Source of the DNA: Scyliorhinus canicula
Taxonomy: Eukaryota
DNA length: 64,000 nt
NCBI RefSeq assembly: GCF_902713615.1
Contig: NW_024055744.1
Location: 2,461,936 to 2,525,935, forward strand
Direction of reading: 5' to 3'
The notes beneath the pieces are model-generated. The model saw only the letters and a list, made by a program, of their open reading frames with translations, ran no database searches and was not told the DNA's origin. The translations under genes and the position numbers were made by a program. Of the stretch, positions 13,249-58,280 are shown in pieces; positions within the stretch are counted from its first letter, which is position 1, and each line of letters starts with the position of its first letter.

Positions 13249-14067
13249 TCACAGAAGGTCCAATGAAACATGTAATCCCGTCTCATGTTGAGAAGTGGAC
13301 GGCGTCTCCCCTGTATGAACTCGCTGATGTCTCCTCAGGTTGGATAATTGAGTAAATACTTTCCCACAACGAGAGCAGGTGAATGGCGTCTCCCCAGTGT
13401 GAACTCGCTGGTGTGTCTGCAGGTTGGATAACTGAGTAAATCCTCTGCCACACTGAGAGCAGGTGAGTGGCCTCTCCCCAGTGTGAATTCGCTGGTGAAT
13501 CCGCAGATGGAATAACCGAGTGAATCCCTTCCCACACGGAGAGCAGGTGAATGGCCTCTCCCCAGTGTGAATTCGCTGATGTTTCCGCAGGGTGGATGAA
13601 TCAATAAATCCCTTCCCACACTGAAAGCAGGTGAATGGCCTTTCCCCAGTGTGAACACGTTTGTGTCCCCGCAGGGTGGATAAGTGTGCAAATCCTTTCC
13701 CACACTGAGAGCAGGTGAATGGCCTCTCCCCAGTGTGAACTCGCTGGTGTGACTGCAGGGTGGATAGCCGAGTGAATCCCTTCAAACACTGAGAGCAGGT
13801 GAATGGTTTCTCCCCAGTGTGAACTCGCTGATGTATCTGCAAGGTGGTTGAATCACTGAATCGCTTCTCACACTGAGAGCAGGTGAATGGCCTCTCCCCT
13901 GTGTGAACTCGCTGGTGTGTCTGCAGATTGAATAACTGAGTGAATCCCTTCCCGCACTTGGAGCAGGTGAACGGCCTGTCCCCAGTGTGACTGCGTCGAT
14001 GAATCTCCAGCTTAGATGGGAATCTAAATCCCTTCCCACAGTCCTCACATTTCCATGGTTTCTCCAT
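13249..14067 (-). CDS. C2H2 zinc-finger protein ZNF-A, 9 intact fingers plus a decayed 10th, no effector domain
   Basis: ATG at 14067 (MEKPWKC), TGE(R/K)PF linkers, open frame; upstream acceptor ttttacag|G with exon start at 14415. Confidence 0.85.
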
Positions 14068-14584
14068 GTTGTGTGTCTCCAGGTTGTACAATCAGTTGAA
14101 GCCTTGTCCGCAGATACAACACGAGTATGGTCTCTCCCAGCTGTGAATGTTGTTATGTTTTTCAGGCTGTGTAACTGGTTAAAGCTCTTTCCACAGTCAG
14201 TTCACAGGAACACTTTCACTCGGGTGTCTGTTGTGTGGGTCTTGGTGCTTTTCCAGTCACACTGATGGTTGAAATCTTTAGCTGACAGTTCGGAAAAAGG
14301 TTTCACCTTCTAGATTCAAAGGTTGGAGATATTCAGGTTCCAAGGAATCGAGTAACTGTCAGATTGAGACGTGACGATTGAGATTTCTGTCTGTAATTCT
14401 TCCTCATCTAATATCCTGTAAAAACAATTTACAAAATTCATCACTGTCAGTACAGGATAGAAACTCAGAACAGACAATTCTAGTTTCTATGTGACATTTT
14501 TTCCTCTCCCTTATTCCCTGAAAGCTGTAAATCTCCATCCCACACACTCTCCCTCCATTCTCATTCTGGTGTATCGCAGTTGAG

Positions 14585-14810
14585 TAGCACAGTGGTTAGC
14601 ACTGTTGCTTCACAATTCTAGGGTCCCAGGTTTGATTCCCGGCTTGGGTCACTGTCTGTGCGGAGTCTACACAGGTCCCCATGTCTGCGCGGGTTTCCTC
14701 CGGTTTCCTCCCACAGTCCGAGGACATGCAGGTTAGGTGGATTGGCCATGCTAAATTGCCCCTTAATTGGACAAAATGAATTGGGCACTCTAAATTTATT
14801 TTTAAAATAG
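14585..14810 (+). mobile_element. HE1-like SINE, short-tail variant
   Basis: gtagcacagtggttagcactgttgcttcac head and core, ending gggcactctaaatttattttt. Confidence 0.8.
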
Positions 14811-15027
14811 AAAAAAAAGTCTCGATGAACCAGAGGAGAGAATCCTGAACGTTCAGCAAGATGCCTCCGTCGAAATTCAATCCTTTGAAAACCAGCCGAG
14901 TGGCTGGCGGAGGTACTGGAGGATTTGGAGAACCGAGGGTCAGAGAAAGAACATCTGAGTCATTGGCCTGTCAGAAGGTGTGGAGGTAAGGCTCCCATTA
15001 GGGTCTTTGAGGACCGGCTGCCATGCT

Positions 15028-15340
15028 GGGCGCCATGGTAGCACAATGGCTAGCACTGTTGCTTCACAGCGTCAGGGACCCCGGTTCAATTCCCAGCTTG
15101 GGTCACTGTCTGTGCAGAGTCTGTATGTTCTCCCTGTGTCTATGTGGGTTTCCTCCGGGTGTTCCGGTTTCCTCCAACAAGTCCCAAACAAAGACGTGTT
15201 TGTTAGGTGAATTGGACATTCTGAATTCTCCCTCTGTCTACCTAAACAGGTGCCGGAATGTGGCGACTAGGGGATTTTCACAGTAACTTCATTGCAGTGT
15301 TAATGTAAGCCTCCTTGTGAGACTAATAAAGATTATAATG
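15028..15340 (+). mobile_element. SINE with HE1-like head and an alternative 3' tail
   Basis: HE1-type head and core joined to ccggaatgtggcgactagggg..cacagtaacttcattgcag..taataaagattat. Confidence 0.75.
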
Positions 15341-55471: not shown

Positions 55472-55484
55472 TACCCAAGACAAC

Positions 55485-56160
55485 CATCAAACCTTTGAGT
55501 CCCAATGTCTTATTGTTGAGGCAGAGATGGAAAAGAAGAGAAAGACATTCTGCTTTTCAGTTCTCACTACCTCTTGGAACATCCTCCTCCATGTGTCTAA
55601 AGATCTACGACCATGCCCAGTCATATCAAGAACCACCTCAGAAACTCACAACCTTGAGTAAAGGCCATCCTGAAATTGAGGTATGGCTGATGACAATGAG
55701 GGTAAAGTGCAGCAGGGAGTATGAGCTGTCATCCTGGCCCAGGGAGCAGGAGGGGAGAATGTAATGAATTTCTATCCTGGACTGACAAGGATGAATTTTG
55801 AAAACTCCTTTTACAGGTGGTTAGAAAGGGAGGATTTACACAAAGCAAACTCAAACCAGCAATAGGTTTATTTTTTTCCTGAATTTCGATTTTGGACTGA
55901 CAGATGGCTTTTGTTACTTTCATTTTCAGGGTATTAGAAAAGGATTTGCAGGCAGGAAACATAAAGAAAACCTGACATCAAACTCTGACAGCATCACTCG
56001 ATTCATCAGGTCCTGGATATTATCGCACTTTCAGTGTAAGAATTGAGTTCCAAGACATTACCACTCACTGTAAAATGTCTTCCTCATATCGCCCTGTAGA
56101 TCTTGCTCCAAATCTTAAATCTGTGTCCTGAAATCCTTTTTACAATCAGCTAGTAGGAGC
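55485..56160 (+). other. ZNF cassette 5' region of ZNF-F (RTE relic, doubled acceptor)
   Basis: Acceptors at 55816 and 55929; colinear with 24180-24870. Confidence 0.6.
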
Positions 56161-57288
56161 AACGTTACTTTAGCTACTTTACTGAGACCAATCAGAAACT
56201 TGAACACCTCTATCATTCTCCTTTGCTCCAAGAAGAACAACTGCAGTTTCTCCAACCTAACATTGCAACTAAAATCCCTCATTCCTGGAACTAATCTGGT
56301 AAGTCTCCCCTGCACTCTCTCAAGGACCATCACATCCTCCATAATGTGTGGTGATCACTGGTTTGCACAGATCCAGATGTTCAGTCTTCCTGTCTGTGAT
56401 GTCATCAGGCACCTCCAGTTGCGTGACGACATCATCCCCGTTCTCAACTGGGAGATTTTTCCTCCGACTCTAGAGCTTCTGATATCTTTCCAGCTGCAGG
56501 CGACAGTGGGAGATTTTAATATGGAAAACAGTGAAACTGCTTCACAGCTAAGTATGTCTGAGCATTTATCAATACCTTTGAGCTTTTAGTGCTCTGCTCT
56601 GTTACCTGTGAGGGGTTCCATGTCTCTGGGGCTGGTGTGACCCTTGGAAAACAATGCAAAACTCCGTGGGGAGAGGGACAACCACCTGTCGACATATAAA
56701 ATCCCTTCTCTCTCTTTCTCTCGCTCTCCCCCTCCCCCACCCCCCTCTGGAAAACCAAGATTCACGTTAAAATCTGGCAGTGACTTAGTTCATCGAGACC
56801 TGAATGTAAGTATTTATGTTTGATCTGCGGTTCAAGAATTAAACACCTGTGTAGCTGGAAATAGCGAAGAGCAAGATTTGCAAACAAGGATGTGAATGTT
56901 CCATTAAAATGTTGCTTAGCCGAGTCCCAATGTAGGTCAGTGAGCATAGGGGTGATGAGTGAGTGAGTGGGACTCCAGTTTGGCAGCTTCCCTTCCCTGA
57001 AGGACATCAGTGAACCAGTTGGGTTTTTGTGACAATCCAGCAGTTTTCATGGTCGCTTTTCTCAGTGTCGGCCCCACAAATGACCAGATTCATTCAGCTC
57101 AATTTCACAACCTGCCTTTGTGTTTTTGTCGTTCTCTCTCACTCCCTATTTTCTGTTTTCAATCAATTTCACAGGAGATTCAAAGGATTTACAATTGGGA
57201 AACTCAAACCAACATCACATCAAGATCGCACGGAGCCTCACAATTTACCATCGCCCGTATATCATCGGAACATCAACAAAGTTTAAAA

Positions 57289-58280
57289 ATGAAAGGAAAA
57301 AGTATCATTCACAGTGGGGAAAAACCGTACACATGTTCTGAGTGTGGACGAGGATTCAGCAGATCATCTGACCTGTCAAAACACAAGTGTAGTTAGACTG
57401 GGGAGAAATCGTGGAAATGTGAGGACTGTGGGAAGGGATTCAGTTACCCATCTCGCCTGAAACTTCATCGGCGCCATCACACAGGAGAGAGGCCGTTCAC
57501 CTGAACTGTGTGTGCAAAGGGATTTGCTGATTCATCCAACTTACGGCAACACCATCGGGTTCACAATGGGGAGAGACCGTTCACCTGCTCCAAGTGTGGG
57601 AAGGGATTCACCACTTCATCCCACCTGCTGACACACCAACGGGTTCACACTGGGAAGAAACCGTTCACCTGCTCTCAGTGTGGGAAGGGATTCACACAGT
57701 CATCCACCCTGAAGACACACCAGCGACTTCACACTGGGGAGAGACCATTCACCTGCACTGTGTGTAAAATGGGATTTGCTGATTCATCCAACTTACGGCA
57801 ACACCAGCGGGTTCACAATGGGGAGAGACCGTCCACCTGCACTGGGTCTAAATAGGGATTTGCTGATTCATTCACACTCCGGAAACAACAGCAGAGTCAC
57901 ACCAGGGCGAGACTATTTACCTGCTCCGAGTGTGGGAAGGAATTCACTCAGTCATTAAACCAACAGAAACAACAGCGGATTCACACTGAGGAGAGACCAT
58001 TCACCTGCTCTGTGTGTAAAATAGGATTTGCTAATTCATAAACTCAGAAACACTAGCGTGTTCAATCGGGGGGAAAAACGTGGAAATGTCGGGACTGTGG
58101 GCAAAGGTACAGTTGGAAATTCATCAGCGCATTCAGACTGGGGAGTGACCATTTTTATGTTGTGTGTGTGGGAAGGGATTGACTAGTTACCCACCAGGCT
58201 GACACACTGGTGAGTTCACTCTGGGGATTCCGTCAATAATCGAACCTGCGGAAACACCAGCCAGTTCACAAATAACAATG
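57289..58280 (+). pseudogene. ZNF-F pseudogene, same subtype as ZNF-D
   Basis: Acceptor at 57174; ATG at 57289 ([13 protein letters not shown]); in-frame stops at about 57394, 57502 and 57853; later fingers decayed. Confidence 0.85.

What the first reader, a model, noticed from the sequence alone, without database searches (positions are those of the whole stretch)
13249..58280. Effector-less C2H2-ZNF family with a conserved first finger and variable later fingers
Seen: every copy starts with nearly the same atypical finger, W-K-C-x-D-C-G-K-G-F-x-(Y/F/S)-P-S-x-L-x-x-H-R-R-x-H ([84 protein letters not shown]). It has Trp at the first aromatic position and Pro at the helix start, while later fingers differ in their base-contacting residues. 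No N-terminal domain is coded. Known: tetrapod KRAB-ZNFs and cyprinid FiNZ-ZNFs form TE-rich birth-and-death clusters that silence transposons through a dedicated effector domain. Inference: this may be an analogous cartilaginous-fish system in which the WKC finger docks a cofactor instead of binding DNA.
Basis: partly seen in the sequence, partly recalled or inferred. Interest (0 to 1): 0.8.

Follow-up and report, generated by a model that had tools for sequence, protein, structure and literature searches.

The report
Shark zinc-finger family with constant first finger
This catshark region holds a transposon-rich cluster of zinc-finger genes and dead copies. They belong to an old shark-and-skate family that shows no known repressor domain, and its working finger array always begins with one unusually constant finger whose job is still unknown.

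Summary
The W-K-C-x-D-C-G-K-G-F-x-x-P-S finger is at all six stated places, plus a decayed seventh. A, C, D and E sit in open frames; B and F are pseudogenes.

It is not the ancestral first finger. Every copy has finger relics upstream: two dead fingers with shared TGA stops in A/C/E, and a still-open finger in D/F.

Every gene starts with a conserved splice acceptor and leader. RNA contigs join upstream leader-like mini-exons to D and E. The chain seen gives no in-frame upstream coding exon, so the proteins most likely start at MEKPWKC (A, C, E) or MEGKS (D).

No known effector domain appears here or in 13 gene models from six shark and skate species.

Across 29 such fingers, helix positions -1, +1, +2, +5 and +6 vary far less than in 196 other fingers. 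Position +3 varies normally, and the linker that follows is canonical.

So "no known effector domain, constant first finger" holds. "Cofactor dock instead of DNA binding" is untested and not favoured.

The scan has noted the same kind of cassette and dead-finger leader elsewhere in this genome (s1-223453, s1-203730).

The parts
13249..14415 (-). Gene A terminal exon. Leader plus two dead fingers at 14068-14415. ORF 13249-14067 (272 aa, 9 fingers) starting at MEKPWKC. WKC finger at 13987-14055.
   Evidence: Kozak context AACATGG; 1 upstream ATG in the 348-nt leader.
18983..20452 (-). Pseudogene B. It has the leader module (20274-20452), dead fingers, a WKC finger broken by a 2-nt deletion (about 19996-20062), a stop in the next finger, and then an open 288-codon array (18983-19849).
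28875..29836 (+). Gene C terminal exon. Leader plus dead fingers at 28875-29221. ORF 29222-29836 (204 aa, 7 fingers), ending at a stop inside the eighth finger. WKC finger at 29234-29302.
44348..45666 (+). Gene D terminal exon. Acceptor AG|44348 (alternative AG|44356). ORF 44464-45666 (400 aa) starts at MEGKS. Its first finger is degenerate (C-x-C); the WKC finger is second, at 44584-44652, followed by 12 more fingers.
47699..49222 (+). Gene E terminal exon. Acceptor AG|47699. The 600-nt leader holds a repeat insertion and dead fingers. ORF 48299-49222 (307 aa) starts at MEKPWKC. WKC finger at 48311-48379.
57118..58280 (+). Pseudogene F. It has the leader module (57118-57302) and a D-type first finger. 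A stop precedes the WKC finger (57412-57480) and another stop lies in the next finger. Three further fingers follow. A second, decayed WKC-like finger sits at about 58081.
42578..42692 (+). Leader-like mini-exon. Acceptor AG at 42576-42577; donors at 42692|GT and 42699|GT. RNA contigs join it to D and to E.
   Evidence: The GT..AG joints 42692->44348/44356 appear in four runs and 42692->47699 in three runs.
24633..24739 (+). Leader-like mini-exon downstream of a CpG-island promoter. Its 3' end matches, with 1 mismatch, the RNA sequence found joined in front of 42578. It carries a TAG in the frame that leads into D.
23601..24300 (.). CpG-rich, promoter-like module with GCGCATGCGC at 24080. Similar modules lie at 38100-38720 and 51251-52050. 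Further CpG islands lie at 20501-21200 (same motif at 21120), 40901-42200 and 51401-52200.
   Evidence: Promoter function is inferred, not shown.
17310..56039 (.). Eight orphan leader modules, each an intron 3' end plus leader without an array: 17310-17422(+), 21167-21325(+), 24468-24561(+), 24581-24742(+), 27224-27403(-), 42530-42704(+), 55765-55858(+), 55879-56039(+).

Best explanation
This is a cluster from an old elasmobranch family of C2H2 poly-zinc-finger genes that show no known effector domain. Here it has four open genes (A, C, D, E), two pseudogenes (B, F) and eight orphan 5' modules, lying among LINE copies.

Gene layout: a CpG-island promoter, then short non-coding leader-like exons, then one large terminal exon. 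The terminal exon carries a leader, decayed or decaying N-terminal fingers, the WKC finger and a variable array.

Translation most likely starts at a Met born in the linker just before the WKC finger (MEKPWKC in A, C, E), or at MEGKS one degenerate finger earlier (D). The WKC finger is therefore the first working finger.

The finger is kept by purifying selection with a nearly fixed helix: Y/F/S at -1, P at +1, S at +2, E at +5, T/I at +6, then H-R-R-S-H. It is joined to finger 2 by a canonical linker.

My reading (inferred): it is a constant N-terminal anchor or cap of a DNA-binding array. It would make fixed or backbone contacts, while the later fingers supply specificity. It is not a stand-alone effector.

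Shown: anatomy, conservation, splicing, absence of known domains. Inferred: the start codons, promoter function, DNA binding, and any role in TE control.
For: - Coordinates and signature.
- Two subtypes with upstream finger relics and shared TGA stops.
- Fourteen leader modules share a conserved branch site, pyrimidine tract and CAG|G acceptor.
- GT..AG RNA joints link a leader-like mini-exon to D (four runs) and to E (three runs).
- The chain 24633-24739 -> 42578-42692 -> 44348 carries a TAG and has no ATG before MEGKS.
- The leader shows no codon periodicity and is as conserved as the adjoining intron (0.68 vs 0.68).
- The start context has A at -3 and G at +4 in A, C, D and E.
- Models in other sharks start at the same Mets: P0121 and P0128 at MEKPWKC, P0156 at MEKAWKC, and P0123 at MEGKS.
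- The Met is present in most copies with dead upstream fingers and absent in P0154, whose upstream fingers carry no stop.
- A and E keep 272- and 307-codon open arrays even though the shared TGA stops lie upstream.
- The finger is conserved in S. torazame, Cetorhinus, Carcharodon, Heterodontus, Pristiophorus and the skate Rhinoraja.
- pN of the framework is 0.08, against 0.15-0.22 in the other fingers.
- Entropy is lower at -1, +1, +2, +5 and +6 (at most 0.0085 of resamples as low), while +3 is not different.
- The linker after the finger is almost invariant T-G-E-R/K-P.
- A solved ZNF array, ZFP568, has P+1/S+2 fingers.
- Only zinc-finger Pfam families appear in all the models.
Against: - A finger with a fixed helix at the end of arrays that otherwise differ is not what a purely sequence-reading finger looks like. 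An aromatic residue at -1 is unusual for base contact.
- No DNA-binding, expression-start or proteomic data exist here.
- RNA support comes from short, multi-copy Logan contigs with only 18-27 nt on one side of each joint. Paralogues elsewhere could therefore supply them.
- The link to the 24.7-kb exon rests on one contig with one mismatch.
- E has 9 upstream ATGs and C has 4 before the proposed start.
- The stretch SNLERHKDTxTM just upstream of the Met is conserved across species although I call it untranslated.
- Entropy tests ignore the relatedness of the sequences, and the fingers were picked by W or P+1.
Confidence: 0.5

Rival explanations
1. The WKC finger does not bind DNA. It docks a co-repressor, making this a shark analogue of KRAB or FiNZ zinc-finger genes that silences transposons.
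For: - The helix is nearly fixed at -1, +1, +2, +5 and +6 across six species, while the neighbouring fingers vary.
- N-terminal decay has stopped exactly at this finger in both subtypes.
- No known effector domain was found.
- The cluster is TE-rich.
- C2H2 fingers that bind proteins are well known (Brayer and Segal 2008, cited in PMC8455134).
Against: - The linker to finger 2 is the canonical DNA-mode linker and is the best conserved in the array.
- Position +3 varies like a base-reading residue.
- P+1/S+2 fingers occur in the solved ZFP568 array.
- WKC-like fingers also occur inside arrays (P0052, and window position about 58081).
- No interaction, repression or TE-binding data exist.
Confidence: 0.17
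2. An effector exists but lies outside what was seen. It would be a coding exon further upstream or downstream, for example a C-terminal partner module such as other notes of this scan report for other catshark ZNF genes. In that case the genes do have an effector.
For: - Every gene has a conserved acceptor, and gene models of relatives span 17-32 kb.
- The leader reads in frame into the fingers at 42578-42736, so it was once coding.
- P0086 has a 190-aa acidic N-terminus, and P0123 and P0121 have non-finger tails.
- Scan notes s1-200268 and s1-249160 report finger arrays spliced to Myb-partner tails. I did not test this.
Against: - The spliced chain seen has a stop and no ATG before MEGKS.
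- The leader is under no coding constraint.
- The N-terminal extensions of four models hit no Pfam family and do not resemble each other.
- The arrays of A, D and E end at stop codons right after the last finger.
Confidence: 0.15
3. The finger has no special function. The signature is an inherited framework of one old subfamily, kept similar by shared descent, slow shark substitution rates or gene conversion. Most copies here are dying genes.
For: - B and F are dead and C is truncated.
- The leader and the intron are equally conserved. A follow-up elsewhere in this genome reached the same view of the leader (s1-203730).
- Fingers 1 and 2 have lower pS (0.32-0.35) than later ranks (0.48-0.63). 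Part of the contrast may therefore come from positional orthology.
Against: - pN/pS is lowest in this finger (0.11/0.35).
- The signature holds between sharks and a skate, and among many paralogues within species.
- The open arrays downstream of old shared stops argue for selection.
Confidence: 0.13

Closest known systems
Tetrapod KRAB zinc-finger genes (KZFPs)
   Same: Tandem C2H2 arrays with T-G-E-K/R-P linkers, all on one large 3' exon. Short 5' exons. Clustered, TE-rich, birth-and-death loci with many pseudogenes.
   Different: No KRAB box (PF01352) was found in any window ORF or in 13 family models. The 5' exons seen are non-coding copies of the gene's own leader. A constant signature finger heads the array.
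Cyprinid FiNZ zinc-finger genes (Wells et al. 2023, PMC10547256)
   Same: A lineage-specific ZNF expansion outside tetrapods. A short upstream exon is spliced to a single array exon. The ancestral leader is acidic, like FiNZ.
   Different: FiNZ is a conserved, coding 28-aa N-terminal domain. The shark leader shows no coding constraint, carries stops and frameshifts, and lies upstream of the likely start codon. The conserved element here is a finger.
Poly-ZNF genes without an effector domain, as annotated by RefSeq in sharks (e.g. 'zinc finger protein 850-like/271-like/91-like/530-like', 'ZFP2-like')
   Same: Same family. These models carry the same WKC finger in the same position.
   Different: The annotations are generic, and many models are chimeras of several genes. 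I found no paper describing the signature finger, the two N-terminal subtypes or the leader.
Mouse ZFP568 finger array (PDB 5v3m, 5v3j, 5wjq)
   Same: It has fingers with Pro at +1 and Ser at +2, including its first finger.
   Different: It has a KRAB domain, no Trp at the first aromatic position, no H-R-R-S-H, and it is not a family-wide constant finger.

Membership tests
C2H2 poly-zinc-finger proteins | Tandem C-x2-C-x12-H-x3-H fingers joined by T-G-E-K/R-P linkers | tested here: met
   Pfam zf-C2H2 and zf-H2C2_2 hit with E-values of 1e-55 to 1e-92. The window holds 52 canonical fingers.
KRAB zinc-finger genes | N-terminal KRAB box (PF01352) on its own exon(s) | tested here: not met
   No KRAB hit in the window ORFs or in 13 elasmobranch models carrying the finger. 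The upstream exons seen are leader copies with stops.
KRAB zinc-finger genes | Recruitment of TRIM28/SETDB1 and silencing of transposons | not testable with these tools
   Needs tethering, AP-MS and ChIP.
FiNZ zinc-finger genes | A conserved, coding 28-aa acidic N-terminal domain on a single upstream exon; restricted to cyprinids (PMC10547256) | tested here: not met
   The leader and mini-exons show no codon periodicity (0.674/0.677/0.689), have the same identity as the intron, and drift in frame with stops. The host is an elasmobranch. I had no FiNZ profile to search with.
SCAN, BTB and PRDM zinc-finger genes | SCAN (PF02023), BTB or PR/SET domain | tested here: not met
   None was found in the window ORFs or in the family models.
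Protein-docking C2H2 fingers (Ikaros, FOG and OAZ type) | The finger binds a protein partner and is dispensable for DNA binding. Linkers are often non-canonical. | tested here: inconclusive
   The fixed helix favours this reading. The canonical linker and the variable +3 speak against it. Binding was not testable.
Birth-and-death, TE-rich ZNF cluster | Tandem paralogues of differing age, pseudogenes and interspersed young transposons | tested here: met
   There are four open genes, two dead genes and eight orphan 5' modules. LINE reverse-transcriptase and endonuclease ORFs lie at 7551-10174, 32716-37003, 38847-40724 and 52992-55505.

The most novel reading that the evidence does not exclude
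Elasmobranchs, which lack KRAB zinc-finger genes, may use a constant N-terminal C2H2 finger (W-K-C..Y-P-S-x-L-E-T/I-H-R-R-S-H) as the built-in effector or docking module of a large TE-facing ZNF family. That would be a repressor domain made from a finger. Its gene start would have moved into the linker in front of that finger as the older N-terminus decayed.
Probability: 0.13. Interest if true: 0.75.

Novelty: new variant of a known kind. Interest (0 to 1): 0.42.

Why it matters
Sharks and rays have large, TE-rich genomes but no KRAB zinc-finger system. How their many poly-ZNF genes act is not described in any paper I could find.

This family gives a concrete handle. Its signature finger has stayed constant between sharks and a skate. 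It marks where the working protein begins, and it behaves differently from the DNA-reading fingers behind it.

If the finger is an anchor, it is a tidy example of division of labour inside a finger array. If it is a docking site, it would be a new route to a ZNF effector. Either way, it is a sequence tag for collecting the family genome-wide, and RefSeq models of the family are often chimeric.

Tried and rejected
- Selenocysteine or read-through of the shared TGA codons. One TGA replaces a Cys codon, but the other replaces Arg (CGA->TGA at a CpG). No supporting context was seen, and the Met and Kozak context downstream explain the open arrays. Rejected.
- Leader as a hidden coding domain. No Pfam hit, no codon periodicity, and stops and frame drift in most copies. 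Rejected for present-day copies, although the leader was once in frame with the fingers.
- Dead fingers as an intron. The GT donor at the end of the leader is used at 42692 and is present in A, but it is absent in B, C and E. It is therefore not a general feature.
- Profile search of 1.84 billion proteins with the 32-aa finger. The ranking was swamped by giant multi-finger proteins, and only 7 of the 150 listed carry the signature. It was useful only as a source of more family members.
- Whole-protein search with D. It returned only generic ZNFs, with none from this genome.
- Exact look-up of the four predicted proteins. None is in the collection, so no public model has these exact ends.
- DNA of the relatives' loci.
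- AlphaFold2 on the first four finger units of E (about 111 aa) without an alignment. Mean pLDDT was 55, so the model was unusable and I made no fold search.
- Literature. I found no description of shark ZNF subfamilies.
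Full report
1. WHAT IS THERE

Six-frame scans find 52 canonical C2H2 fingers between about 13.2 and 58.3 kb. Five begin with Trp: A 13987-14055(-), C 29234-29302(+), D 44584-44652(+), E 48311-48379(+) and F 57412-57480(+).

A 2-nt deletion removes its second Cys and shifts the frame, and the next finger has a stop. F has a stop just before the finger and another in the next finger. C ends at a stop in its eighth finger. A decayed seventh WKC-like finger lies inside F's downstream array near 58081.

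Open reading frames of 272 (A), 204 (C), 400 (D) and 307 (E) codons follow the proposed start codons.

The signature is not chance.
- All five intact fingers share W1, K2, D5, G-K-G, P+1, S+2, L+4 and H-R-R.
- None of the other 47 fingers has W, and only two have P at +1.
- In 1171 fingers of mostly tetrapod ZNF hits, W is 0.7% and P+1 is 3.6%.

2. IT IS NOT THE ANCESTRAL FIRST FINGER

Reading upstream in the same frame shows finger sequence in every copy. There are two subtypes.

Type I (A, B, C, E) has two dead fingers.
- The first Cys codon of dead finger 1 is TGA in A, C and E.
- Helix position -1 of dead finger 2 is TGA in A, C and E. It derives from CGA: the Heterodontus model P0154, whose upstream fingers carry no stop, has Arg there. 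B has lost this stretch.
- Four codons before the Trp there is an ATG in the linker (MEKPWKC), with A at -3 and G at +4 in A, B, C and E.

Type II (D, F) starts at MEGKS and has one further finger before the WKC finger.
- In D that finger is degenerate (C-x-C).
- In F it is followed by a stop.

3. GENE STRUCTURE

A profile built from the sequence in front of the fingers finds 14 modules in the window. Each module has two parts:
- about 55 nt of conserved intron end, with a CTGAC branch site, a pyrimidine tract and CAG|G;
- about 110 nt of leader.

Six modules head the terminal exons of A-F. Eight are orphans: 17.3k, 21.2k, 24.47k, 24.58k, 27.4k(-), 42.53k, 55.77k and 55.88k.

RNA contigs from four runs in four studies were laid on 42500-48450. 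They show GT..AG joints from a donor at 42692 (or 42699), at the end of the orphan module 42578-42692.
- The donor joins the acceptor of D at 44348 (or 44356) in all four runs.
- It joins the acceptor of E at 47699 in three runs.
- One contig carries 30 nt in front of 42578 that match 24710-24739 with one mismatch. This is the end of another orphan module, which has a GT donor.

CpG-rich stretches lie just upstream of the modules. Three carry GCGCATGCGC (15767, 21120, 24080), and others lie at 40.9-42.2 kb and 51.4-52.2 kb. One of these promoter-like modules is repeated three times. Promoter function is inferred.

Caveats: the contigs are short unitigs, often shared among paralogues, with 18-27 nt on the shorter side of each joint. 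The joints show that these splice sites are used in the family. They do not prove that every joint comes from this locus.

4. IS AN N-TERMINAL DOMAIN CODED?

- In the chain 24633-24739 -> 42578-42692 -> 44348, the frame that runs into D has a TAG in the first exon and no ATG before MEGKS at 44464. The other frame stops inside the second exon.
- Across the 11 longer modules, identity is the same at the three codon positions (0.674, 0.677, 0.689) and the same as in the intron part (0.676). Frames drift and stops are common. The leader is therefore not under coding constraint now. At 42578-42736 it still reads in frame into a finger, so it was once coding.
- Gene models of relatives start at the same Mets: P0121 and P0128 at MEKPWKC, P0156 at MEKAWKC, P0123 at MEGKS. 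Others have unrelated N-terminal extensions without any Pfam hit.
- Thirteen models with the finger, from Scyliorhinus torazame, Cetorhinus, Carcharodon, Heterodontus, Pristiophorus and the skate Rhinoraja, hit only zinc-finger families. A further model, P0052, also hits histone families and is a chimeric fusion.

'No known effector domain' therefore holds on present evidence. Their gene spans of 17-32 kb leave room for exons I could not see.

5. DOES THE FINGER EVOLVE DIFFERENTLY?

Among A, C, D and E, compared by finger rank:

| Finger rank | pN, framework | pN at -1, 2, 3, 6 | pS |
|---|---|---|---|
| WKC finger | 0.08 | 0.33 | 0.35 |
| Finger 2 | 0.15 | 0.42 | 0.32 |
| Fingers 3-7 | 0.18-0.22 | 0.50-0.71 | 0.48-0.63 |

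Across 29 distinct elasmobranch WKC fingers against 196 other fingers of the same proteins:

| Helix position | Entropy, WKC | Entropy, other fingers | Share of 2000 resamples as low |
|---|---|---|---|
| -1 | 1.41 | 2.78 | 0 |
| +1 | 0.22 | 1.44 | 0 |
| +2 | 0.64 | 1.54 | 0.0085 |
| +3 | 2.46 | 2.74 | 0.10 |
| +5 | 0.85 | 2.10 | 0 |
| +6 | 1.69 | 2.78 | 0 |
| -2 | 2.16 | 2.28 | 0.35 |

- The helix is close to Y-P-S-x-L-E-(T/I)-H-R-R-S-H, with only +3 free.
- The linker after the finger is the most canonical in the array: T 28/28, G 25/28, E 26/28, R/K 28/28, P 25/28.
- These tests ignore relatedness, and the fingers were chosen by W or P+1.

6. READING

The constant helix argues against an ordinary sequence-reading finger.

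Three things fit a finger that still works in tandem with finger 2 on DNA:
- the canonical linker, which by established knowledge marks fingers that bind DNA in tandem;
- the variable +3;
- P+1/S+2 fingers in the solved ZFP568 array.

N-terminal decay stopped at this finger in both subtypes. The arrays behind the old shared stops are still open in A and E. The finger and the arrays have therefore been under selection.

I favour a constant N-terminal anchor or cap of a DNA-binding protein with no known effector domain (0.5). The rivals are:
- a cofactor dock (0.17);
- an unseen effector exon (0.15);
- mere inheritance without a special function (0.13).

7. NOVELTY

- RefSeq annotates these genes as generic 'zinc finger protein N-like'.
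- I found no paper on shark ZNF subfamilies or on this finger.
- FiNZ is defined as a conserved 28-aa coding exon, which this family lacks.
- Other notes of this scan describe the same cassette and dead-finger leaders elsewhere in this genome. My own tests agree with the follow-up that found the leader no better conserved than the intron.

8. OPEN POINTS

- The stretch SNLERHKDTxTM between the second TGA and the Met is conserved across species, although I call it untranslated.
- D and E share one donor exon.
- The 17.8-kb link from 24.7 kb skips gene C.

Noticed in passing
window 22583-22656 (-): A tRNA-Lys (anticodon CTT) gene, or the tRNA-derived head of a SINE, lies between the two divergent ZNF units. 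Rfam gives 60.6 bits, and ARAGORN agrees.
   Followed up: partly
window 58498-58629: A long, near-perfect hairpin lies downstream of F. A permissive Rfam scan of 58300-58850 gave only sub-threshold microRNA-precursor matches, as any long hairpin would, and no hammerhead match at E up to 1. Another note of this scan calls it a double hammerhead.
   Followed up: partly
window 52992-55505 (-) and 7551-10174 (-): Two very similar LINE copies. One has an intact 837-aa endonuclease plus reverse-transcriptase ORF, which suggests a young and possibly active element inside the cluster. It sits between F's promoter-like module and F's leader exons.
   Followed up: partly
window 10572-11048 (-): An ORF just upstream of the LINE reverse transcriptase. 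It has a weak GDSL-lipase-like match below Pfam's threshold (E 2.7e-07, 31.7 bits against a cut-off of 32.9). It may be the esterase-type ORF1 of this LINE.
   Followed up: no
window 34100-38000 (+): A GC-rich (59%) LINE of a different family. Its ORFs are long but only weakly match RVT_1. It accounts for the largest CpG-rich block of the window.
   Followed up: no
window 23715-24044, 38100-38720, 51251-52050: A promoter-like module is repeated three times and has an internal inverted repeat (51421-51481 against 51698-51758). This fits a shared or mirror-image promoter, as another follow-up of this scan reported elsewhere in the genome.
   Followed up: partly
window 47815-48120: E's leader carries an insertion of about 250-300 nt of a very abundant repeat. 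RNA word depth spikes to about 15,000-49,000 at 47873-48071, and many contigs run off into unlike sequence at 47974-47979.
   Followed up: no
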